Positions 3,714 through 55,541 of a DNA stretch of 64,000 bases are shown here, in pieces; within the stretch, counting starts at the first letter, position 1, and each line of letters begins with the position of its first letter. Source of the DNA: Trichosphaerium sp. ATCC 40318 (taxonomy: Eukaryota > Protista > Tubulinea); the NCBI GenBank assembly GCA_038496445.1, contig JALMLS010000268.1:1-64000 (forward strand), in the 5' to 3' direction. The notes below the pieces were generated by a model. The model worked only from the letters and a program-made list of their open reading frames with translations, was not told the DNA's origin and searched no databases. A program made the translations under genes and the position numbers.

Positions 3714-3784
3714 GCGCCGGTGGTGTAGGGGTATCATATGTCCTTGCCATGGATGTGACCCGGGTTCAAATCCCGGCCGGTGCA
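3714..3784 (+). tRNA. tRNA-Gly(GCC)
   Basis: Acceptor stem GCGCCGG/CCGGTGC+A, anticodon arm ATGTCC-TTGCCAT-GGATGT, T arm CCGGG-TTCAAAT-CCCGG; T5 Pol III terminator at about 3792-3796. Confidence 0.95.
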
Positions 3785-12243: not shown

Positions 12244-12410
12244 CTTACTTCGTATTAAGAAAAAATGGTAACTGGAAGAGAAAGCGTTTGATTTATTTAT
12301 TAATTTTATTTGGAACGTTTATGACAACACGCCACTCTACGAATAGTATGTGCACTACGCTATTCTGTTAAATATCTCAGTAGTGCAGGGTGTTTTTATT
12401 GTTTTTTCGC

Positions 12411-13133
12411 ATGACAACTATACAACTCAAAAGCGGTTGCGTTATTACAAGTTACGAGCAGTTCTTAACACAAAAAGAAGCCACGGAGCTGTTTAACGTG
12501 CTAGAAAAAAAACCGAGTTGTACAATAGACTGGAGGCAAAAGAAGGTTCATGTTGGCGATCGAGAGGTGACTGAACCACGATTTACGGCTTTCTTGGGAG
12601 AACGAGATGGCTTAGACTACAAATACAGTGACACTGTAAATACATCGCAAAAGTGGCCTGCTGCGGTTGAAGAGGTGAAAGATAAGATAGAAAAGGTGAC
12701 TGACCAATGTTTTAATGTGGTGTTGCTTAATTGGTACCAAAACGGGTCTCATCACGTTGGATGGCATGCTGACGCTGAAGAGGATCTTGTAGAAGGTGCT
12801 GTTATAGCTTCCCTCTCGTTAGGTGCAACGCGTACGTTTCAGCTGCGACACCTTGATGACAGCCAAAAGGGCGCGTTAAAAACTCAAGCGCATACTAAAA
12901 GAAGGAAAGGTATTGCCTTGACGCCGCAAGAGACCGAAGTGCTGGATTACGCTCCTGGTGAAGATCCTGAAATGAATCGATCAATGCTTGTTTGTCACGG
13001 AGATTTGTTGATTATGGGTAATACTTTGCAGCGTTACTGGAGGCACCGTGTTCCTCGTGAAAAAGGTGATGTTGGTCCACGCATTTGTATGACTTTTAGG
13101 CTTGTCAAACAATCAAGTATAGATAGTAAGTAG
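12411..13133 (+). CDS. AlkB-family Fe(II)/2OG dioxygenase (ALKBH2/3-like), intronless
   Basis: FNVVLLNWY, WHAD (HxD), IASLSLGATRTF, WRHRVP, RICMTFR; first ATG at 12411. Confidence 0.92.
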   Translation: MTTIQLKSGCVITSYEQFLTQKEATELFNVLEKKPSCTIDWRQKKVHVGDREVTEPRFTAFLGERDGLDYKYSDTVNTSQKWPAAVEEVKDKIEKVTDQCFNVVLLNWYQNGSHHVGWHADAEEDLVEGAVIASLSLGATRTFQLRHLDDSQKGALKTQAHTKRRKGIALTPQETEVLDYAPGEDPEMNRSMLVCHGDLLIMGNTLQRYWRHRVPREKGDVGPRICMTFRLVKQSSIDSK

Positions 13134-13605: not shown

Positions 13606-13676
13606 TGCACCGGCCGGGATTTGAACCCGGGTCACATCCATGGCAAGGACATATGATACCCCTACACCACCGGCGC
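13606..13676 (-). tRNA. tRNA-Gly(GCC), second copy
   Basis: Exact reverse complement of 3714-3784. Confidence 0.95.
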
Positions 13677-19288: not shown

Positions 19289-21244
19289 ATGCACAACAGC
19301 TACCTGTTTATAATACTTTTAAGCGCCTCCATAGCGTTCGGCACGTTTTCGTCCAACCATAACCCTACTTTTGGAAGAGGAACTAAACCCCACATCGTTT
19401 ACCTCTTAGCAGATGTACACGTGATTTTTTTAACAATAACTAAGCGTTACGTAGGATTTGGGCTGGAACAACGTTGGTTGGAGAAACCCAGACATGATAA
19501 CGCCAGTTCTAGATGACATGAAGCACAATGGTATTGAACTAGACCGTCACTACACAGCGCTTGTAAGAATCTAATGGAGTGTTTTGGGTTTTAATTAACT
19601 TGAAAAGGTTTGTGGTCCTACGCGCTCTTCTTTGATGACTGGACGTGTCCCTATACATGTAAGAGAGGTAAATAATAACGTTGCTATACAAGATATTGGA
19701 CCAGAGCTAGAGATGACATTCTTATCCGAAAAAATGCAAGAAGCAGGCTATGAAACGCATTATTATGGTATCTCATTCTATTTTGTGAATTTACACTATT
19801 TTTTGAAAAGCTTTTCTAAAAATACTTTCACAGGCAAATGGCATCTTGGTATGGGTACACCCGAATATCTCCCAATAAATAGAGGATTTAATAAGTCATT
19901 GTTCTTTTTCTCTGGAGCAACAGACTATAACACCCAAGCACGTGATAACAGGGTTTGCGCTGGCGAATTATTTGTAGATCTATGGGAGGTACGTACCGTA
20001 GTTTTGAAGACTTTTTATGGATCACGTGATCACACAGAAATTACAAATGGGTAAAAACTTCTTAGGACGATAACTTTTCCACTAAAAATGGGACGTACAT
20101 GGGATTCACGTTCAACGACGCGGCTGTAGACGCAATTGAAAACCATGACGTTAACAAACCTATGTTCCTTTTCGTGAGCTTCCCTCACCCCCACTGTACG
20201 TAATTACTTATTTTCAAACGCGTTGTGTGCTTTTTCAGAAAATCTCCTTTTGTTAACTTCATGGAGTTCTTATTTTATGTAGCGCCACTGCAAGTCCCTC
20301 AAGAATATGTCGATCGCTATGCTGATAACTTGCCTGTGAATATAAACAGACAATTATATCAAGCTATGGTCACGTTTATGGATGAATCAATTGGTAATAT
20401 AACACAGGCGTTAAAAGACAAAGGAATGTACGATGATACTCTTATAGTCTTTTCTTCTGATAATGGAGGGTACGTTCGACTTTGTGTTACCCTTTCAACC
20501 CAACTCTTACATTCTTTTAGACCTACTCCATTCAGAGGTCTAGAAAGCTTTACTAACGGTGGAGCCAGTAACTTCCCTCTTAAAGGCGGTAAACAGTCAG
20601 ACTGGGAAGGTGGTATCCGTACCGTTGGCCTTGTTGGCGGTGGTATCATTCCAAACAAAATGCGTGGAACAGTGCAAAAGGGATACGTTCACGTGGCTGA
20701 TTGGTATTCAACATTTTGCTTTCTTGCTGGCGTAGACCCAGAAGATACAAGAGCTGCTCTTGTGGGATTACCACCGATAGACTCGAAGAACATGTGGGGT
20801 CTATTTTCAGGACAACAGAGGTTTTCCTACCGGATAGAAATTCCAATATCCTCCAACCCTACTTTCAGAGGCTGGTTAGAAGAACCAACAGGTTTTATCA
20901 ACTTTATACGTGGTCCCTACAAGTTCCTTGTGGGAGAGGGAATCCCATTCGCTGGCCATACTGGCCCAGTGTACCCTAACGCAACAGAAGTATACTTGAC
21001 TCAGACAATGGTGCAAGATTGTCCAAACGGTTGTTTATACAATATCTGGACTGACCCTGAGGAAAGGTTTGACTTGGCACCAACACGTCCATTTCTACTG
21101 CACCTTATGAAGTGGCGATCTCGAACACTTGAAGCTGGTGCTTTTAGAAGAACATATTTAGACCCAGCAGTAGAAGCATGCGATGCAGCAAGAGATAGAG
21201 GAGGATGGTGGGGACCTTTTGATTTGACTTCAACTGCACCTTGA
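19289..21244 (+). CDS. Secreted/lysosomal arylsulfatase (ARSB/I/J-like)
   Basis: KPHIVYLLAD|DLGW, CGPTRSSLMTGR (CxPxR), GKWHLG, FSSDNGG, NFPLKGGK..WEGGIR, HVADWY. Confidence 0.95.
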
Positions 21245-21609: not shown

Positions 21610-22613
21610 TTATTCATTGGACTTTCGACTAAAAGCCTCTTTGTAAACAGCTTGGATTTTGCCGTGTGAGAACGTGTAGTGTGCCATTAATTCACCATCC
21701 CAAGTCCACAACTTGTACTCTCCTTCTACTATACCATTGACATAATGACTATGTTGTTTTAATACCCCATCTTTATACCATGTCTTATATTCTCCATTCT
21801 TCTTGCCATGTACACAAGTATACAATTCCTTTAATGTACCATTATTATGCCATACTTTTACTTCTCCGTGTTGTTTCCCATTAACATATGTACATTGCAG
21901 TGCCATATTGCCATTTGTATACCACTCCTTGTACTCTCCGTCAAGCTTACCATTAGTATAATTATACAACTTTGAAAGGCGGTTTGTGAGATACTTATGT
22001 TTGAATTCTCCATCAAGTTTACCATTTGAGTAATTACTCTTACAATACAAAAATCCCTTCTTTGTCCACTTCTTAAACTCCCCTTCAAGTTTACCATTCA
22101 TATAATTACATTGTTTGTACATTTGACCATTGTCATACCATTCATTATACTCTCCATCAAGAACATCGTTGACATAGGTTGATTGAATGGCCATTTGACC
22201 ATTTGGATACCAATTTTTGTACAATCCTTCAAGTTTACCATTGACATATGTACACTCGTTGACTATGTTACCATTTCGATGCCACTTTTTGTGATATCCT
22301 TCTGTTTTACCATTGACATAGCTACATTGCTCAAACAATTGGCCTGTAGGTTTCTTTTTCAACCATTTGCCATGCTTTTTAATGTCGCCATCAAACCTTG
22401 TTGAAGTTGCTGTGTATTTTGATAAAAGAGGTAGCTTTAAATACATTTCATGATCTAAATCGGCGATATCAAGAAGTAGCTCAACCGGAAGGGACAACAA
22501 GTGGCAAGGCTTTGTAAGTTAGTATTAGTTTACTAAATGTACGATTTAGTACTTACAGCGTGTTTAGGGTTAAAAAATTGGTTTAAAAAGCTAAATAGAG
22601 AAGCTTGTGACAT
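21610..22613 (-). CDS. F-box-like + MORN-variant (YwqK-like) repeat protein, copy A
   Basis: Exon 1 22613-22557 (MSQASLFSFLNQFFNPKHA), 47-nt intron, then LLSLPVELLLDI and about ten 24-aa NGKL.GEYK.WY.NG repeats. Confidence 0.88.
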
Positions 22614-28774: not shown

Positions 28775-29767
28775 ATGTCACAAGCTTCTCTATTTAGCTT
28801 TTTTAATCAATTTTTTAACCCTAAACACCATGTAAGTACTAAATATCTTCTAATAAGTAACTAATAGTAACTTACAAAGCCTTGCTATTTGTTGTCCCTT
28901 CCGGTTGAGCTACTTCTTGATATCGCCGATTTAGATCATGAAATGTATTTAAAGCTACCTCTTTTATCAAAATACACAGCAACTTCAACAAGGTTTGATG
29001 GCGACATTAAAAAGCATGGCAAATGGTTGAAAAAAACCCCTGCAGGCCAATTGTTTGAGCAATGTAGCTATGTCAATGGTAAAACAGAAGGATATCACAA
29101 AAAGTGGCATCGAAATGGTAACATAGTCAATGAGTGTACATATGTCAATGGTAAACTTGAAGGATTGTCCAAAAATTGGTATCCAAATGGTCAAATGTCC
29201 ATTCAATCAACCTATATCAACGATGTTCTTGATGGAGAGTATAATGAATGGTATGACAATGGTCAAATGTACAACCAATGTCATTACGTGAGTGGTATAC
29301 TTGAAGGGGAGTTTAAGAAGTGGACAAAGAAGGGATTTTTGTATTGTAAGAGTAATTACTCAAATGGTAAACTTGATGGAGAATTCAAACATAAGTATGT
29401 CACAAATCGCCTTTCAAAGTTGTATAATTATACTAATGGTGAGCTTGATGGAGAGTACAAGGAGTGGTATACAAATGGCAATATGGCAATACAATGTACA
29501 TATGTTAATGGGGAACAACACGGAGAAGTAAAAGTATGGCATAATAATGGTACACTAAAAGAGTTGTATACTTGTGTACATTGCAAAAAGAATGGAGAAT
29601 ATAAGGCATGGTATAAAGATGGGGTATTAAAACAACATAGTCATTATGTAAATGGTATAGTAGAAGGAGAGTACAAGATGTGGAATGTAATTGGGTATTT
29701 AATTGTGCATAACATGTACGCACATGGCAAAATTGTAGTTGAGAATAAAATTAACTATGTACCATAG
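28775..29767 (+). CDS. F-box-like + MORN-variant repeat protein, copy B
   Basis: Exon 1 28775-28831, intron 28832-28879, exon 2 in frame with ORF 28889-29767; inverted near-identical paralogue of copy A. Confidence 0.88.
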
Positions 29768-30612
29768 TCAATAATTAAAAATCGACTAAAATTAGATTGC
29801 AACACTTTGTATAAAACAACCTAAAAGCATTAATTGTAAAAGTTAATAAATTACAAGTACGACACTGCAAATCCAAATGAAGAGCTTTCTCCACAGCATA
29901 AGTGCCACGAAAAAAAGTGCGCCCGTTTCAGATGAAAGCATAAACGGAGGTCACACAAGTCTAACGTATTAACATCCTGCTTCGTTTAAAAACAAACGTC
30001 AAACTCATTACCTATAATACATTGTTATTTGAGAGTAGATTTATGTGCAAATGGGAATAGTATTCTGTTAAAATGAGTTAATAGATCTCACTTTGATTCG
30101 CCGTGCTAGTTCATAAAAAACTGCTAGAATTCTTGCTTCAATTACGCTGCACTAATGGCAGTATACAGGTGATTGTGATGAAGTATGTATGCATTTAATG
30201 TAATGAAGCACTTTGGAGCTTAGCACTATGCTTCATGCAGCACCTGTTGGTGCACAGTACTCATAGTTACTGTTAATACTGCGAACTATCCTGGTACAGG
30301 GGCTTTAGCATTGGCAAGGTCATTGTAGCTAAAATTATGACGAAAGAACGTATTGAGAAAATGTTGAAAGAATCAACTTATCGCTTCTTTATTAGAAGCT
30401 TTTGGCAGTTGACAATACACTGATTTTTGTTTGTAATACATTGTTCTGTAGGTTGTCCTTGACAGACAATAGATAGAAAAAGTAGTTATGCCCAACGTTT
30501 CATGACAGTTATTTTTTGTTTGTTCATAAAATCATGACTCTCAAGAGTAGTCCATCTGTGGTTGTCTGAGCCAAACTAAGATACGGATCTACTTCAAGGT
30601 TGTCAATATCAG

Positions 30613-32543
30613 TTATATCCCATATCCATAAAAATCATCGTCATCACTACCATATGCTTGCGCAGAAAATACCGAATTTGTTAAATCTGCACGTGTAAAG
30701 GGATTCTGCCTTTTGAACTCTTTCATTGTACTTTTAAACATTGATACACTAAGTAGCTCGTTCCATTGATGGCAAACTCTCCTAGATATACCCATACTGC
30801 GTGGATCCAGATTTTTGAATATGATTAGTGTCACTTCAGGAGGAAATGTGAGATGAGAACTGAAGCTTGGTTCAACTTTGAATCGCCAAGATTTTGCCCA
30901 AACTTGCTTGAAGTTATCAGAAGGCTTATACCCCGGAATCTCATTATTTAAAGGCTTGATACTTTCTAGGTGTACTCGCTTTTGATCTCCTGTAACCCAC
31001 TGGTTAAATGTATCAGCAAGCCTATCGAGAAGCAATTCTTTCACTCCTTCAATACGTCTCACTGTTGCAAAGTAATCTATCAACGGGTGAGCACATAGGG
31101 TATTCTTATACAGAACATACCCACTACAGGTGTCATAGGTGTAGCCTTTTCGCAGAGAACCTTTCTCAGTGCAGATCGCTAAACGTGTTAATAAGGGTAG
31201 CCACAAGGCATCACATACTACGAGTCTAGAGCGCCATTTTTGTTCAAACTCTTTTGGTAGTAGTTTCCTATGAAGAGACTTAAAGGGATATTAAAGCTTG
31301 ATGTCGTACTTTAATGCTTCATTCGCTACTTGGTAAACGGTGTCAATATTAGAGGCTACGCGACGATTCACTTTGCCTCCTTTGTCAGCTATAGATAGTA
31401 TCGTTAAGTATACTAAAACCTTTGGAGACACATTATGCTGCAATAACAGACTGGAGAGCTGAACCTCTAAAGCTACACGAATGGCATCAAATTCGCGCAG
31501 ATGTATAACATTGCGGATGGAACTGCGAAATGTTTCTACTCGGTTATATCTCATCAGTTGCCATATATACAACGGGTATATTTTCGACGCTATGTTGCTT
31601 CCTATCTTCCATTCCTTTTTAGTAAACTTCAAGCGAGTGTTGGTACTTTTGATTTTAACGACATAACCTAAAAAATCACGTGTGAAAAGCGAGAATTTGG
31701 AGTACATTTACGGTACCTTCTGTATTTATACTCTTATCGTTTATCTTATTGCGAAGCTCTTTTAGACTCATTTCAATGGGAGAGATACATTTGACGCCAA
31801 GAAATTCTGCTATTTTTTGGACTTTGTTAAGGTCTTTCTCTAATCCGTTATGGTCGTAGACTGACAACAATACACAACCTAAAACATCCTTAGTAATACT
31901 AAAGTGGTAACATGGATTACTAATACCTTCGAAATTGTAGTCTACAACTACAGTATTTTCTTTATAAATTGCTTCAAACACATACGAAAATCCGTCTTTC
32001 ATGCACCCAATTTTTGCATTTTTTTGTAGCCATTTCTTAGCCCAAATAGCTTGCTTTGATCCCATATTTCCTTTTGTCGTAGCCATGAGTTGCCCGTGCC
32101 ATAGAAACGCTACAATCATTGACCCTTTTTCGAAGAACTTTGTTAAAACGATCTTTTTAAAAAACACGTGTACCATCAAATTTTTCGGTAACTTCAAGTA
32201 CCTCACCATACAGTTTTGATTCTTCTTTGGAGGTATATTGAAAGAACTTTTGGAACCCATGTGCGACAACTCTCTCAGAGACTTTATGAATTACTAGCGC
32301 TCTACATATGTTGCCTACTGCGTTTGGCTCGTTTGGAGAAAGAGAACCATAGTTGTACCGATACACCTCTAAACCAGTGCTGCCATGTAGTCTACAACTT
32401 ATAGCTAGCGATAGTTAACTAATGGAGCACTAGATGTCCTAAAGAGTCTTCTAACCGTTGTTTTTGACAGCTTCATCTAGACGCTCAACGAGGGTTTTAA
32501 AGGGTATTATTCTTGATGGATGAACGCTGGTATGTGTTGACAT
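30613..32543 (-). CDS. T4 Rnl1-type RNA ligase fused to a C-terminal F-box
   Basis: Nucleotidyltransferase motifs across exons: YRYNY, ICRALV, FQKFF, TEKFDG|SM (I), VFEAI (III), VLLSV (IIIa), TEG|YVV (IV), RLKF (V); an in-frame intron at about 31268-31309 joins the last exon containing LTFPPEVTLIIFKNLDPRSMGISRRVCHQWNELL. Confidence 0.85.
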
Positions 32544-32914: not shown

Positions 32915-34194
32915 ATGGGTTCAAAAGAGTCTAAGAACCGCAGAGAGAAAACAAGCGCACGAGGAAAACAATCACATACTAATTGGCCTGCAACGCTCTT
33001 TAATGATAGAACACTACACGAAATGGGTATTTCTGATACAAACAATCCGGAAATTCTACAAAATAGCCAAATACAGCCAACAATGATGAACAAGACAAGA
33101 AATGGACGAGGAGATTGTATTGAAGAAATAAAAGAGTCGCTGGCTGAAAACGACCATCAAAACGAGGCATTAGAGTATTCAGACTGGATAGTCGTTAAAG
33201 AAGGAGAAGAAGTACTGTTAGATCTCTTTCCAGTAGAGATATGGGACTTAATCTTGTCATACCTAACACCACAACAACGTGCATTATCTTGTATTGTATC
33301 ACGTGATTTTCACATGCTATGTACTAAATAATGTCATATCAAAAGTATCTTGGATTGATGACGATGTTTTTATTTTTGGAGGGAATGCCATGGCTGGGAT
33401 TATTCGATTACCTAATTCTGAGGTGATTCAAGAATTCAAGGTAAGTTGTTCTTTATATAAACATGCGGCGAGAAATCAAACATCCTTTCTTTGTTTGTCT
33501 GTTTGTGCAGAATGATTGTCCTAACACTTTTTCTCCAAGTTGCCAGTCACAACCCGAGGAAATGCAAGTGGTATTGTATCAGGTGTTAGTTATAACAATG
33601 GTAGAGTGCTTCTAGCTGCAAGAGAAGGGACAATGGCAATTTATGATGTTGAAAAAAATGAATCCATTTGGATAGGTCCTGTTTCTTCAATGAGTGATGT
33701 TGAAACAAGCGCAACTTGGTGTGATGAAAACGTATTCAGTGTAGCTTTGTGTCCTCGTCAAAAACAAGGAAACATGCATATTTGGGATTTACGTGCAAAA
33801 CCACGTGTTGCAATAGAACTACCACGTGGACAATTTGCATACAGAGACTGTTTATATTTTTGGGAAAATGAGTTGGTTCTTGCGTCAACACACAGGGTCG
33901 ACTTATATGACATGCAAGCTATCACAAGAACCTTCAAGAAGTGTTCAAGCTCGTAGTGATTGCAAAGGGTATTGTAAGGATGGTGTTATACTGGCAGGAT
34001 CTGATAGAGTTCAAGTCATTGATTTTAAAACACTTGAAGATTTAGCAATATTAGAAACACCAAAGCGTTGTAGTATGGTGTATTCTCTAGGTTGGACAGG
34101 CAGGTATTGTATGGCAAATTGTGGTCACACAGTATTCTTTTGGGATTTTGACGCCAGCACTACTGAAATTATAGACACTACACCAACTGAGTAG
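32915..34194 (+). pseudogene. F-box + WD40-like gene with N-terminal MGSKES myristoylation-type motif; disrupted reading frame
   Basis: F-box LFPVEIWDLILSYLTPQQRALSCIVSRDF; WD-like IYDVE, IWDLR, LYDM, FWDF; frame breaks near 33330 and 33930 with no usable intron (pseudogene or assembly indels). Confidence 0.6.
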
Positions 34195-45681: not shown

Positions 45682-46464
45682 ATGAATACCATAGAGAAAC
45701 CTCTTTGTGGCAATTTACTACACCTTCCAATGGAACTACAACTAGATATTATCGATATAGACTTTGAAGCGTTTATAATTTGGCCATTGTTATCAAAACA
45801 AGCAGCAATGACAACAAGATTTAATGACAAGCTTGAAAAACATGGTAAATGGTTACGACAAAAAACTAACTCTTATTGTAAACGTATCATACGTAAGGAG
45901 TATTGGAAGCACGGTAAAAAGCATGGAGAAGAAGTTGTTTGGTATACCGATGGTCAATTACGCTCTAGGCGATATTTTATTGATAATGTAGTTGAGGGAG
46001 AGTGGAAACGTTGGCATTGTAATGGTACTATTTGGCAGCGTCGTTTTTTCGTGAAGAACAGATTAAATGGCGAAGTAAGGAAATGGCATCCTGATGGTAA
46101 ACTGTTGGAACTTTGTCATTATATTCACGGTAGGTTAGAAGGAGAGCACAAGCAATGGTATAAATGTGGAAGCTTGTGGCTGCAAACTTATTATGTCAAT
46201 TACAAACAAGAAGGTGAAAGGAAGTTGTGGTATCGCAGTGGCCAATTAAGGGAGCAAGGGAGTTACGTTAAAGGTGTATTACATGGAGAGTATAGAATGT
46301 GGAATGAAAATGGCCAATTAAAAATACATTGTCACTATGCTGATGGTAAGAAAGATGGCGCGTACTTGGAGTTTTATAATGGTACATTGAAGTCTAAAAG
46401 CTACTATGTAAAGGGTAGGCTGCAACAGTTTAAGATAAGGTTTAAGGACAAGTTATCACCTTAA
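45682..46464 (+). CDS. F-box-like + MORN-variant repeat protein, divergent copy C (intronless)
   Basis: LLHLPMELQLDIIDID...PLLSK...TRF....KHGKWL shared with copies A/B, followed by G..EGE.K.W..NG repeats. Confidence 0.85.
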   Translation: MNTIEKPLCGNLLHLPMELQLDIIDIDFEAFIIWPLLSKQAAMTTRFNDKLEKHGKWLRQKTNSYCKRIIRKEYWKHGKKHGEEVVWYTDGQLRSRRYFIDNVVEGEWKRWHCNGTIWQRRFFVKNRLNGEVRKWHPDGKLLELCHYIHGRLEGEHKQWYKCGSLWLQTYYVNYKQEGERKLWYRSGQLREQGSYVKGVLHGEYRMWNENGQLKIHCHYADGKKDGAYLEFYNGTLKSKSYYVKGRLQQFKIRFKDKLSP

Positions 46465-54614: not shown

Positions 54615-55541
54615 ATGGAGGGGACTGCCATAAAACAATCGAAAAAACATCAATTATCAATAATAGAACTAGCAACACTTCAGTGGCTACCATCAGAGAC
54701 ATTGACACATATTTTAAAGTATTTAACAAAACACCATCGTATTAGAGCGTCTATGGTATCACACCTATTTAATAACATAATTCGTAACAATATTGGACTT
54801 GAGCGTCTCCGTTTACAAAGCTCATTAGATTGTTTGGCTCTTAAAGGCAGTCCCTTGCTTAAGAACACAGAGATTTGTTGTACGTACTTTGATCTATCCC
54901 CAAAAGATATATCGTACCTTGTTGGTGTGCATACTATAAATCTTCATGGTGCTTTTGGTATTAATGAAAGAAGTATAAAATATCTTGCTGGTGCTCACAC
55001 AATAAACCTGGCATTCACAGGTGTGAATGACAAATGTATTCTATCATATGTGAGTGCTGTGCGAGAGGCAAATGAGCGATTTGTTCATGATATAGACTTG
55101 GGATATTCACCAATAACAGATGTTTCTTTGGAAGCACTTAAAAGTGTAAATACAATGAGACTTCGTGGTGTACAAGGTATAACTATTGAAGGTATTAAAT
55201 TATTGAAAGATGTGACACATATTGCTTTGCATAAACCAAAAGACTCTTGGCTTGAACACCTTTCAAATGTTTCAACAGTTCATATTCGTGGAAATACAAT
55301 AACTGATAAAGGTATACAGTCTTTGTTAAGTGTAAAGAGACTAAGACTTATTGGTAGTACACAAATAACAGATCAAAGTATTAAACATTTGGTACATTTA
55401 GAACATATTGATGTTTCTTATTGTGATAAGATTACAACAGCTGCTTTGAAGAAAATTCAACATCTTAAAAGTATTAAAGTGAACGGCTTTGGTTTACGTA
55501 CTGTTGCAAACCTGCGTTGTCGTTTAACTCGTCCTGTGTAG
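54615..55541 (+). CDS. F-box + leucine-rich repeat protein, intronless
   Basis: WLPSETLTHILKYL...ASMVSHLFN; repeats such as L.GVHTINL.G, ITD..I..L and IDVSYCDKIT. Confidence 0.85.
   Translation: MEGTAIKQSKKHQLSIIELATLQWLPSETLTHILKYLTKHHRIRASMVSHLFNNIIRNNIGLERLRLQSSLDCLALKGSPLLKNTEICCTYFDLSPKDISYLVGVHTINLHGAFGINERSIKYLAGAHTINLAFTGVNDKCILSYVSAVREANERFVHDIDLGYSPITDVSLEALKSVNTMRLRGVQGITIEGIKLLKDVTHIALHKPKDSWLEHLSNVSTVHIRGNTITDKGIQSLLSVKRLRLIGSTQITDQSIKHLVHLEHIDVSYCDKITTAALKKIQHLKSIKVNGFGLRTVANLRCRLTRPV

What the first reader, a model, noticed from the sequence alone, without database searches (positions are those of the whole stretch)
30613..32543. Phage-type RNA repair ligase (Rnl1) fused to an F-box
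Seen: ligase motifs I, III, IIIa, IV and V, with the KxDG lysine intact (EKFDGS after splicing). An intron AA|gtacga...catag|G keeps the frame into an exon ending in a clear F-box and an acidic/aromatic tail (DDDDFYGYGI). Known: T4 Rnl1 reseals anticodon-nuclease-cut tRNA, and F-boxes bind Skp1 of SCF ubiquitin ligases and are normally N-terminal. Inference: an intron-containing, probably horizontally acquired RNA ligase linked to the SCF system. It could couple RNA break repair to ubiquitination, for example in antiviral defence or ribosome/tRNA quality control. Motif V reads KFT rather than the usual KxK, so activity may be altered.
Basis: partly seen in the sequence, partly recalled or inferred. 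Interest (0 to 1): 0.8.

Follow-up and report, generated by a model that had tools for sequence, protein, structure and literature searches.

The report
RNA ligase joined to an F-box
This amoeba-type genome has an intact six-exon gene that joins a phage-type RNA-joining enzyme to a ubiquitin-ligase docking motif (F-box); the same layout recurs in corals, green algae and slime moulds, I found no paper on it, and its function is untested.

Summary
On the minus strand, 32543-30613, there is a six-exon gene of 1689 coding bases (563 codons). It has five GT..AG introns of 51, 49, 48, 49 and 42 nt.

- **Ligase part.** Exons 1-6 encode a T4 Rnl1-type RNA ligase. Its lysine motif, EKFDG|S, is split by intron 2.
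- **F-box part.** The last exon also holds an F-box that scores above both Pfam cut-offs, then an acidic Tyr/Gly tail.
- **The junction.** The ligase's own C-terminal signature (GYKPSDNF) and the F-box lie in that one exon, which cDNA contigs cover. The fusion therefore does not depend on the 42-nt intron.
- **Relatives.** At least 62 database protein clusters share the ligase, the signature motif and the F-box. About half end in GYGS plus one residue. They include two octocorals, two volvocine algae and Physarum.

A recent horizontal transfer is not supported. The closest relatives are eukaryotic and the gene has the local introns and base composition.

The link to ubiquitination is inferred, not shown. 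I found no paper describing this fusion.

The scan has noted similar ligase-F-box genes on other pieces of this genome; none has been followed up.

By rule, the joined protein was never searched or folded.

The parts
32456..32543 (-). Exon 1 (ATG at 32543; 88 nt, ends in phase 1). N-terminal helix of the ligase, HPSRIIPFKTLVERLDEAVKNN.
   Evidence: Matches HPARLMPF...EAVKDG of relatives P0079 and P0168. Frame and phase.
32405..32455 (-). Intron 1, 51 nt, GTTAGA...GCTAG.
   Evidence: The acceptor was placed by homology. The following TGLEVYRYNY aligns with TGLEVF/TGLEMF of P0144, P0006 and P0030.
32174..32404 (-). Exon 2. Rnl1 N-terminal elements ICRALVIH (32286-32309) and FQKFFQY (32235-32255). 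Motif I EKFD (32175-32186) with the Lys codon at 32183-32181.
   Evidence: PHROG 562 profile positions 38-105. Weak PF09511 hit, E 0.0077. BLAST to family members.
32125..32173 (-). Intron 2, 49 nt, GTACAC...AAAAG. It splits the Gly codon of KxDG.
   Evidence: PHROG 562 positions 105 and 107 flank it, so the match is colinear. Without splicing the frame stops at 32159-32157.
31927..32124 (-). Exon 3. Motif Ia TTKGNMGSKQAIWA (32039-32080) and motif III YVFEAIY (31964-31984).
   Evidence: PHROG 562 E 2e-10. 46-52% identity over 62-65 aa to the twelve best family members.
31879..31926 (-). Intron 3, 48 nt, in frame and without a stop codon, GTATTA...TTTAG.
   Evidence: Most of the 150 listed hits end at query residue 67, or skip about 16 residues there. 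In the family alignment FEG is followed directly by (C/L)VLL.
31717..31878 (-). Exon 4. Motif IIIa CVLLSVYD (31853-31876). It ends with the NTEG of motif IV.
   Evidence: Aligns with the family's LVLLAxxDxxGxEL block. BLAST hits.
31668..31716 (-). Intron 4, 49 nt, GTACCG...TTTAG. It splits motif IV (EG|YVVK).
   Evidence: The family has an uninterrupted EGWVVK here. Phases.
31310..31667 (-). Exon 5. The rest of motif IV and the variant motif V, YVVKIKSTNTRLKFTKKEW (31609-31665), then the helical start of the ligase C-terminal region.
   Evidence: Aligns with EGWVVKFxDGxRQKIV...HPQIVW of the family. 34.7% identity over 72 aa to Physarum P0044.
31268..31309 (-). Intron 5, 42 nt, GTACGA...CATAG. 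It contains the in-frame TAA at 31293-31291.
   Evidence: Canonical ends, and the same frame on both sides. The downstream frame stays open for 225 codons with no ATG before the F-box. Not covered by reads.
30613..31267 (-). Exon 6 with the stop codon (30613-30615). It holds the end of the ligase body, the F-box and the tail.
   Evidence: Pfam F-box hits above both cut-offs. Colinear BLAST hits to the C-terminal modules of P0163, P0008, P0162, P0044 and others. cDNA contigs cover 30431-31060 at 100% identity.
30886..30933 (-). Ligase C-terminal signature GYKPSDNFKQVWAKSW. The family consensus is GYxPSxNFxQTWxKGW.
   Evidence: Y, P, F, Q, K and W are invariant in 15 sequences. 21 of 64 stand-alone Rnl1-like relatives end with RPTxNxLEGYxPS about 10 residues before their C-terminus. 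Phage and bacterial Rnl1 models align up to this motif.
30745..30852 (-). F-box, LTFPPEVTLIIFKNLDPRSMGISRRVCHQWNELLSV.
   Evidence: PF12937 27.7 bits and PF00646 25.5 bits, both above their cut-offs. The C-module profile finds only F-box proteins in the PDB, with FBXW7 best at E 3.7e-5.
30616..30654 (-). Acidic/aromatic C-terminal tail YGSDDDDFYGYGI.
   Evidence: It aligns with the family's SD-rich stretch and terminal GYGS plus one residue. 29 of 62 members end exactly in GYGSx.
30431..30612 (-). 3' untranslated region, as far as the cDNA contig reaches.
   Evidence: Contig record 1 spans 30431-30869 with no differences.

Best explanation
SHOWN. This is one intact eukaryotic gene of six exons and 563 codons. 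Exons 1 to the middle of exon 6 encode a complete Rnl1-type RNA ligase. It has the N-terminal CR.LV and KFF elements and motifs I, Ia, III, IIIa and IV. Motif V keeps its first lysine but lacks the second. It ends with the C-terminal GYxPS signature of a bacterial/phage Rnl1 subfamily. Directly after that signature, in the same exon, come a canonical F-box and a short acidic Tyr/Gly tail. The gene is the short form of a conserved eukaryotic family. The long forms carry, in front of the ligase, a P-loop kinase and a capping-enzyme-like nucleotidyltransferase.

INFERRED. The F-box docks the protein on Skp1 of an SCF-type ubiquitin ligase. The ligase domain is adenylylated on the motif I lysine and binds 5'-phosphate/3'-OH RNA breaks, most likely in stem-loops such as tRNA anticodon loops, as T4 Rnl1 does. 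The protein would therefore work like the F-box DNA helicase Fbh1: an enzyme that acts on a nucleic-acid lesion and brings an SCF complex to it. The RNA would be resealed, and a protein at the break (a nuclease, a stalled ribosome component, or the ligase itself) would be ubiquitinated.

The conserved acidic/aromatic tail may act as an RNA-mimicking regulatory or partner-binding element. This is speculation.
For: Gene model:
- Phases close to 1689 nt, and all five introns are GT..AG and 42-51 nt long.
- Every exon has colinear matches in the same relatives.

Ligase identity:
- PHROG 562 is colinear over intron 2, E 2e-10.
- tblastn finds phage 'tRNA ligase' genes.
- The family profile finds only T4 Rnl1 in the PDB, 2c5u at E 4.6e-7, with K99, E227, G228 and K240 aligned.
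- The AlphaFold model of relative P0153 (NTase region pLDDT mostly above 85) has T4 Rnl1 as its best Foldseek match, E 2.9e-10. It aligns with phage and bacterial PF09511 clusters over residues 1-383.
- Relatives P0166, P0162 and P0041 pass the PF09511 cut-off.

Active-site conservation:
- KxDG is present in 58 of 62 members. E, EG, R and K are invariant in the family alignment.

F-box:
- Pfam scores above cut-off here and in relatives.
- Only Skp1-binding F-box proteins are found in the PDB.

Fusion:
- The signature motif and the F-box are in one exon covered by cDNA contigs. One contig carries a template-switch-oligo end that fixes the transcript to the minus strand (the identity of the oligo is from my own knowledge).
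- P0001 is a single 1530-nt ORF, and P0044 is a Physarum transcript.

RNA-repair context:
- The long forms have a kinase, a capping-enzyme-like NTase, the Rnl1 domain and the F-box.
Against: - No biochemical or genetic data exist for any member.
- The second motif V lysine (T4 K242) is Val in 44 of 46 family members and Thr here. From memory, K242 is essential in T4 Rnl1, so adenylylation may be weak or altered.
- The Pfam PF09511 score of the window's own pieces is below the cut-off, because the domain is split over exons.
- RNA evidence covers only 30431-31060, so no intron is confirmed by reads.
- Skp1 binding, substrates and the tail's role are pure inference.
- The model of the window's last exon was poor (pLDDT 56).
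Confidence: 0.55

Rival explanations
1. The ligase domain is no longer a working ligase. It serves only as an RNA-end or nucleotide-binding receptor that gives an SCF complex its target, a pseudo-enzyme substrate receptor.
For: The second motif V lysine is lost across the family: RxKxV in 44 of 46 members, against RxKxK or KxKxK in 57 of 64 stand-alone relatives. In the alignment, T4 K242 faces Val. The long forms carry a second, capping-enzyme-like NTase that could do the chemistry.
Against: KxDG, motif III Glu, motif IV EG, and the Arg and first Lys of motif V are invariant or nearly so over very distant taxa. That is the pattern expected of a working active site. RLIG1, an active RNA ligase, is described with a single motif V lysine (PMC11494293). 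The short form in this window has no second NTase.
Confidence: 0.2
2. It is an ordinary RNA repair or splicing ligase. The F-box only controls the ligase's own abundance or location, by self-ubiquitination or by Skp1 binding outside an SCF complex. No other protein is targeted.
For: F-box proteins are commonly turned over by their own SCF complex, and some bind Skp1 outside SCF (general knowledge). The F-box sits at the C-terminus with only about 40-60 residues after it, so no classical substrate-binding domain follows it.
Against: The module has been kept for a very long time together with a conserved terminal GYGS tail. That suggests a more specific partner interaction. Nothing tested here separates this reading from the main one.
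Confidence: 0.15
3. These are two separate units, or a decaying gene. Translation stops at the TAA at 31291, and the F-box ORF is a separate or dead piece.
For: The 42-nt intron is not covered by reads. The cDNA contig starts at 31060, inside the last exon. This genome is full of F-box genes, with at least six F-box-like ORFs in the window.
Against: The downstream frame is open for 225 codons with no ATG before the F-box. The ligase's own C-terminal signature lies downstream of the intron, in the same exon as the F-box. Relatives carry both halves in one ORF or transcript. The intron has canonical ends and the local size.
Confidence: 0.04
4. This is a recent horizontal acquisition of a phage or bacterial ligase by this amoeba, followed by local fusion to one of its many F-boxes.
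For: The ligase module belongs to a subfamily common in phages and Actinomycetota. Viral contigs hold NTase-only relatives at 22-41% identity.
Against: The best matches are eukaryotic proteins with the same ligase-signature-F-box-tail order, from Cnidaria, Chlorophyta, Physarum and marine protists. The gene has five spliceosomal introns and host-like GC. No viral contig carried the C-terminal module.
Confidence: 0.05

Closest known systems
Bacteriophage T4 RNA ligase 1 (gp63, Rnl1; Pfam PF09511; PDB 2C5U, 5TT6, 9DO4)
   Same: Same nucleotidyltransferase family. It shares KxDG, the K119-equivalent Lys, motif III Glu, motif IV EG, the first motif V Lys, and the N-terminal CRG and KFF elements. 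It is the only PDB family found by the family profile, and the best structural match of a modelled relative.
   Different: Identity is only about 15-25%. The second motif V lysine is missing. The C-terminal region differs and ends in a GYxPS signature that T4 Rnl1 was not shown to have. An F-box and a tail are appended. The gene is eukaryotic and has introns.
Stand-alone bacterial/phage Rnl1-like ligases of 350-400 aa ending in RPTxNxLEGYxPS (for example P0064, P0081, P0086; Streptomyces and Bacillus phage 'tRNA ligase')
   Same: Closest non-fused relatives. They have the same core motifs and the same C-terminal signature.
   Different: They keep RxKxK in motif V and stop about 10 residues after the signature. 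They have no F-box and no GYGS tail.
Uncharacterised homologues: Dendronephthya gigantea XP_028392639.1, Paramuricea clavata '2-5 RNA ligase', Gonium pectorale KXZ47387.1, Tetrabaena socialis PNH03221.1, Physarum polycephalum EukProt P001247
   Same: Same family. They have the Rnl1-like domain with RxKxV, the GYxPSxNFxQTWxKGW motif, the F-box and a Tyr/Gly/Ser tail.
   Different: Most are long forms, with an extra P-loop kinase and a capping-enzyme-like NTase in front. The window's protein is a short form with a longer helical linker, Thr instead of Val in motif V, and GYGI instead of GYGSx at the end.
F-box DNA helicase 1 (Fbh1; PDB 9XZJ)
   Same: A nucleic-acid enzyme and an F-box in one chain. 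It is a functional precedent for an enzyme that also recruits SCF. Its F-box is among the PDB hits of the C-module profile.
   Different: The enzyme is unrelated (an SF1 helicase acting on DNA) and the F-box is N-terminal. This is a resemblance of logic only.
Fungal/plant tRNA ligase Trl1/RNL and the seven Rnl1 paralogues of Naegleria gruberi
   Same: These are eukaryotic Rnl1-family ligases. Trl1 also combines a ligase with a kinase. Naegleria shows that protists can hold many Rnl1 genes (PMC4408790). Trl1 ligase domains are structural matches.
   Different: Trl1 has the order ligase-kinase-CPDase and no F-box. No F-box is mentioned for the Naegleria genes in that paper.
Human RLIG1 (C12orf29)
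   Same: An animal 5'-3' RNA ligase with a KxDG lysine. Only one motif V lysine is discussed for it (PMC11494293).
   Different: It is a minimal NTase without the Rnl1 N- and C-terminal elements and has no F-box. It was not found by any search here.

Membership tests
Rnl1 family of ATP-dependent RNA ligases (PF09511, T4 gp63 type) | Motif I KxDG with the lysine nucleophile | tested here: met
   EKFDG with the Lys codon at 32183-32181. It aligns with T4 K99 through the family profile.
Rnl1 family of ATP-dependent RNA ligases (PF09511, T4 gp63 type) | Motifs III, IIIa and IV (Glu; hydrophobic/aromatic; EG) | tested here: met
   YVFEAIY, CVLLSVYD and NTEG|YVVK. They align with invariant family columns and with T4 E227-G228.
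Rnl1 family of ATP-dependent RNA ligases (PF09511, T4 gp63 type) | Motif V with two lysines (T4 K240 and K242) | tested here: not met
   RLKFT. The first Lys is present and the second is Thr. The family has RxKxV in 44 of 46 members, while stand-alone relatives have RxKxK. The essential role of K242 is from my memory of the T4 mutational work and was not checked here.
Rnl1 family of ATP-dependent RNA ligases (PF09511, T4 gp63 type) | Rnl1-specific N-terminal elements (equivalents of T4 R54, K75/F77 and K119) | tested here: met
   ICRALV, FQKFFQY and TTKGN are present. K119 is aligned. PHROG 562 covers profile positions 38-180. The T4 residue numbers for R54, K75 and F77 are from memory.
Rnl1 family of ATP-dependent RNA ligases (PF09511, T4 gp63 type) | Significant match to the curated family profile | tested here: inconclusive
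   The window's pieces give PF09511 at 16.5 bits, below the 28.3 cut-off, because the domain is split by introns. PHROG 562 gives E 2e-10. Relatives P0166 (45.8 bits), P0162 (39.1) and P0041 (56.3) pass. By rule, the joined protein was not scanned.
Rnl1 family of ATP-dependent RNA ligases (PF09511, T4 gp63 type) | Rnl1 fold | tested here: met
   Tested for relative P0153, not for the window's own chain. The best Foldseek hits are 2c5u, 5tt6 and 9do4. Atlas PF09511 clusters give TM 0.64-0.72 by target.
Rnl1 family of ATP-dependent RNA ligases (PF09511, T4 gp63 type) | ATP-dependent self-adenylylation and sealing of 5'-P/3'-OH RNA ends | not testable with these tools
   This needs biochemistry.
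F-box proteins (PF00646 / PF12937) | Profile match above the curated cut-off | tested here: met
   PF12937 27.7 bits against 24.3, and PF00646 25.5 bits against 20.5. The same holds in relatives.
F-box proteins (PF00646 / PF12937) | Conserved (L/F)P.E(I/V) start, hydrophobic helix pattern and VC..W | tested here: met
   FPPEVTLIIFKNLD...RRVCHQWNELL. The Cys column is invariant in 15 sequences. The profile aligns with the FBXW7 F-box.
F-box proteins (PF00646 / PF12937) | Binding to Skp1 and assembly into an SCF complex | not testable with these tools
   No complex modelling or experiment is available here.
Conserved eukaryotic 'Rnl1-like + F-box + GYGS tail' family (unnamed) | GYxPSxNFxQTWxKGW motif directly before the F-box | tested here: met
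   GYKPSDNFKQVWAKSW at 30886-30933. All seven invariant columns are kept.
Conserved eukaryotic 'Rnl1-like + F-box + GYGS tail' family (unnamed) | Extreme C-terminus GYGS plus one residue, after an acidic Ser/Asp stretch | tested here: inconclusive
   The window's protein ends in YGSDDDDFYGYGI. The acidic stretch and GYG are present, but the Ser is missing and only one residue follows. 29 of 62 members end exactly in GYGSx.

The most novel reading that the evidence does not exclude
The family is an undescribed, widely conserved eukaryotic link between RNA-break repair and the SCF ubiquitin system. In this reading the Rnl1-type domain recognises and seals broken RNA, for example ribotoxin-cut tRNA or rRNA. 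The appended F-box brings an SCF ligase to ubiquitinate whatever protein sits at the break. The invariant terminal GYGS tail and the family-specific loss of the second motif V lysine would then be parts of a regulatory switch, such as a pseudo-substrate tail that gates adenylylation.
Probability: 0.2. Interest if true: 0.8.

Novelty: new variant of a known kind. Interest (0 to 1): 0.6.

Why it matters
RNA ligases of the Rnl1 type are known as repair enzymes in the conflict between phages and bacteria, and as tRNA splicing ligases in fungi and plants. F-box proteins pick the targets of SCF ubiquitin ligases.

A single protein that holds both would point to a direct connection between RNA damage and protein ubiquitination. 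This one is conserved from slime moulds and amoebae to green algae and corals, and it has its own signature changes. I did not find that connection described in the searchable literature.

The family offers simple tests:
- self-adenylylation;
- Skp1 binding;
- removal of the tail;
- putting the second lysine back into motif V.

The short amoeba form is the minimal version on which to do these.

If the ligase domain proves inactive, the family would instead be an example of a repair enzyme turned into a target-recognition module.

Tried and rejected
- **Word search with the last exon:** no hits. The length window excludes the full-length relatives.
- **ESM Atlas feature search of the last exon:** nothing usable; the best score was 0.82.
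- **phmmer of single exons against the PDB:** uninformative. The one exception was a weak resemblance to a single PPR-like repeat in exon 5, made up of summed scores of about 3 bits. I do not trust it.
- **NCBIfam:** nothing.
- **AlphaFold of the window's last exon with 15 sequences:** poor, pLDDT 56. Its Foldseek search found nothing.
- **Sequencing runs:** a single run, held as contigs, covers only 30431-31060.
- **The look-up of encoding contigs:** no DNA was returned for P0001. An ORF of the window was not on record.
- **Burroughs and Aravind 2016 (PMC5062991):** the paper most likely to mention such a fusion, but it is not held. Three literature searches found no description.
- **My first acceptor for intron 1 (32369, an 87-nt intron):** rejected after homology showed that TGLEV is coding.
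- **Tail as a proteasome HbYX motif or a PDZ ligand:** considered and dropped, because the Tyr and Ser positions do not fit.
- **Phylogeny:** not built. The window's ligase is split over exons that I was not to join, and most relatives have no taxon label.
Full report
**What is there**

The feature lies on the minus strand. Three-frame translation and the sequence itself show a series of open segments joined by short GT..AG gaps.

Exact positions:

| Element | Coordinates | Length |
|---|---|---|
| Exon 1 | 32543-32456 | 88 nt |
| Intron 1 | 32455-32405 | 51 nt |
| Exon 2 | 32404-32174 | 231 nt |
| Intron 2 | 32173-32125 | 49 nt |
| Exon 3 | 32124-31927 | 198 nt |
| Intron 3 | 31926-31879 | 48 nt |
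| Exon 4 | 31878-31717 | 162 nt |
| Intron 4 | 31716-31668 | 49 nt |
| Exon 5 | 31667-31310 | 358 nt |
| Intron 5 | 31309-31268 | 42 nt |
| Exon 6 | 31267-30616 | 652 nt |
| Stop codon | 30615-30613 | 3 nt |

The phases close to 1689 nt, or 563 codons. In my working notes exons 3, 4, 5 and 6 were called E3a, E3b, E4 and E5.

**Support for each junction**

- Intron 1. I first placed the acceptor at 32369. Relatives then aligned with TGLEVYRYNY, which that model would have removed. The acceptor at 32406-32405 restores it and gives a 51-nt intron like the others.
- Intron 2. PHROG 562, the family of T4 gp63/Rnl1, matches exon 2 at profile positions 38-105 and exon 3 at 107-180 (E 2e-10). The match is colinear across the intron.
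- Intron 3. It is in frame and has no stop, so it could have been coding. However, most of the 150 listed hits of the big search end at query residue 67 or skip about 16 residues there. In the family alignment FEG is followed at once by (L/C)VLL.
- Intron 4. It splits EG|YVVK, which is EGWVVK without interruption in the relatives.
- Intron 5. It has canonical ends and the same frame on both sides, and it contains the TAA at 31293-31291. By my reading, the other nearby GT and AG sites break the frame.
- No intron is confirmed by reads.

**RNA evidence**

One run (kind not on record, held as contigs) holds part of the stretch. Its contigs cover 30431-30869 and 30850-31060 without a single difference.

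At 31060 one contig runs on into CCCGTACTCTGCGTTGATAC. From my own knowledge this is the reverse complement of the end of the SMART template-switch oligo. That marks the material as cDNA and fixes the transcript to the minus strand.

The covered part holds the 3' untranslated region, the tail, the F-box and the ligase's C-terminal signature. It does not reach intron 5.

**The ligase**

Read directly from the sequence:
- ICRALVIH, FQKFFQY and EKFDG in exon 2
- TTKGNMGSKQAIWA and YVFEAIY in exon 3
- CVLLSVYD and NTEG in exon 4
- YVVKIKSTNTRLKFTKKEW in exon 5

Evidence that this is an Rnl1-type ligase:
- Pfam on single exons gives only a weak PF09511 hit (16.5 bits), because the domain is cut into four pieces.
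- tblastn finds 'tRNA ligase' and 'RNA ligase' genes of Bacillus and Streptomyces phages at about 24-25% identity over 93% of the piece.
- The big search with the exon 3-4 piece found 379 proteins at E<=1e-3.
- A profile of the closest relatives finds only T4 Rnl1 in the PDB (2c5u, E 4.6e-7). In that alignment the family's K, EG and K face T4 K99, E227-G228 and K240, and a Val faces K242.
- An AlphaFold model of relative P0153 (mean pLDDT 75.9, ligase part mostly above 85) has T4 Rnl1 as its best Foldseek match, followed by Rnl3 and Trl1 ligase domains.

**The F-box and the junction**

Exon 6 scores above both Pfam F-box cut-offs. A profile of the C-terminal module finds only F-box proteins among solved structures: FBXW7, Fbh1, FBXO31, beta-TrCP, FBXL17, Skp2, TIR1 and KDM2A/B.

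Just before the F-box lies GYKPSDNFKQVWAKSW. Its Y, P, F, Q, K and W are invariant in 15 sequences.

This motif is not a linker. It is the end of the ligase.
- 21 of 64 stand-alone Rnl1-like relatives of 360-407 aa finish with RPTxNxLEGYxPS about 10 residues before their C-terminus.
- Phage and bacterial PF09511 clusters align with the P0153 model up to residue 380-386, which includes this motif.

The ligase body therefore runs into exon 6, and the F-box is attached to its very end within one exon that cDNA covers. The fusion does not rest on intron 5.

**A conserved family**

Seven of the ten best-matching proteins of similar size that I scanned carry a C-terminal F-box. Among the 181 proteins fetched, 62 have the complete module of signature motif plus F-box.

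Named members:
- Dendronephthya gigantea XP_028392639.1
- Paramuricea clavata '2-5 RNA ligase'
- Gonium pectorale KXZ47387.1 and Tetrabaena socialis PNH03221.1
- a Physarum polycephalum transcript
- MMETSP and EukProt transcripts

Further points:
- P0001 is encoded by one uninterrupted 1530-nt ORF.
- In P0166 and P0162, PF09511 and the F-box both pass their cut-offs in the same chain.
- Long forms of about 930-1480 aa add a P-loop kinase and a capping-enzyme-like nucleotidyltransferase in front. This gives the family the look of an RNA end-healing and sealing machine.
- Viral contigs hold relatives of the ligase part only.

**Two family signatures**

1. Motif V is RxKxV in 44 of 46 members where it could be found. 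It is RxKxK or KxKxK in 57 of 64 stand-alone relatives. The window has RLKFT.
2. 29 of 62 members end in GYGS plus one residue, usually after an Asp/Ser-rich stretch. The window ends in YGSDDDDFYGYGI.

The other catalytic residues are invariant or nearly so.

**How it most likely works**

Shown: a complete Rnl1-type ligase, with one deviating motif, carries an F-box and a conserved tail.

Inferred: the F-box binds Skp1 and so places the ligase in an SCF complex, while the ligase domain engages broken RNA. The nearest precedent in logic is Fbh1, a DNA helicase with an F-box.

I cannot tell which of these applies:
- the ligase seals RNA;
- it only senses RNA ends;
- it is merely regulated through the F-box.

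The strict conservation of the active site favours an enzyme. The lost lysine leaves room for an altered or regulated first step. RLIG1, an active RNA ligase, is described with a single motif V lysine (PMC11494293).

**Horizontal transfer**

The ligase module belongs to a subfamily common in phages and Actinomycetota, so a deep prokaryotic or viral origin is plausible.

This gene, however, has five introns of 42-51 nt and host-like GC (0.384 against 0.370). Its closest relatives are eukaryotic members of the same fusion family. A recent transfer is not supported.

**Known or new**

Protists with many Rnl1 genes are known. Naegleria gruberi has seven (PMC4408790). F-box fusions to translation quality-control enzymes in Naegleria and ciliates have also been noted (PMC6514570).

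I found no paper that describes an RNA ligase-F-box fusion. The most relevant review is not held, so prior description cannot be excluded. Database members are labelled hypothetical or uncharacterised.

Earlier notes of this scan list similar ligase-F-box genes on other pieces of this genome. None has been followed up, and I could not read them.

**Left out**

All searches used single exons by reference, or relatives returned by the tools.

Noticed in passing
window 32915-33328 (+): An ORF with an F-box-like motif (PF12937 19.3 bits, below the cut-off) starts about 370 bp upstream of the ligase gene's ATG, on the opposite strand. The two F-box genes are therefore head to head.
   Followed up: partly
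window 21613-22518 (-), 28889-29764 (+), 45682-46461 (+): Three paralogous ORFs with MORN_2 repeats (E 2e-26 to 8e-24). Each begins with an F-box-like LP(V/M)EL(L/Q)LDI motif. This looks like a local family of F-box-like MORN proteins.
   Followed up: partly
window 54615-55538 (+): An F-box (29.9 bits) followed by leucine-rich repeats. It is an ordinary FBXL-type gene, and part of the F-box expansion visible in this window.
   Followed up: no
window 12390-13130 (+): An AlkB-type 2OG-Fe(II) oxygenase ORF (PF13532, E 1.4e-29). It lies inside the block bracketed by two inverted tRNA-Gly(GCC) genes at 3714-3784 (+) and 13606-13676 (-).
   Followed up: no
window 20225-21241 (+): An ORF that matches only the C-terminal part of the sulfatase profile (PF00884, positions 177-301). 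It is probably one exon of a larger gene.
   Followed up: no
window 31360-31470 (-), exon 5: The segment LEVQLSSLLLQHNVSPKVLVYLTILSIADKGGKVN weakly resembles a single pentatricopeptide repeat. The hits are to designer PPR proteins, at about 3 bits per repeat. It is probably chance, but it lies in the ligase's RNA-facing C-terminal region.
   Followed up: partly
relatives P0047, P0166, P0063, P0044 and others: The long forms of the family combine an adenylate-kinase-like P-loop kinase, a capping-enzyme-like NTase with its own KxDG, the Rnl1-like ligase and the F-box in one chain of 930-1480 residues. P0003 has leucine-rich repeats instead of the kinase.
   Followed up: partly
relatives; the last five residues of 29 of 62 family members: An extreme C-terminal GYGS plus one variable residue is conserved from corals to green algae. 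It resembles the [G/S]Y[G/S] units of FUS-type low-complexity regions, but its fixed position at the chain end is unexplained.
   Followed up: partly
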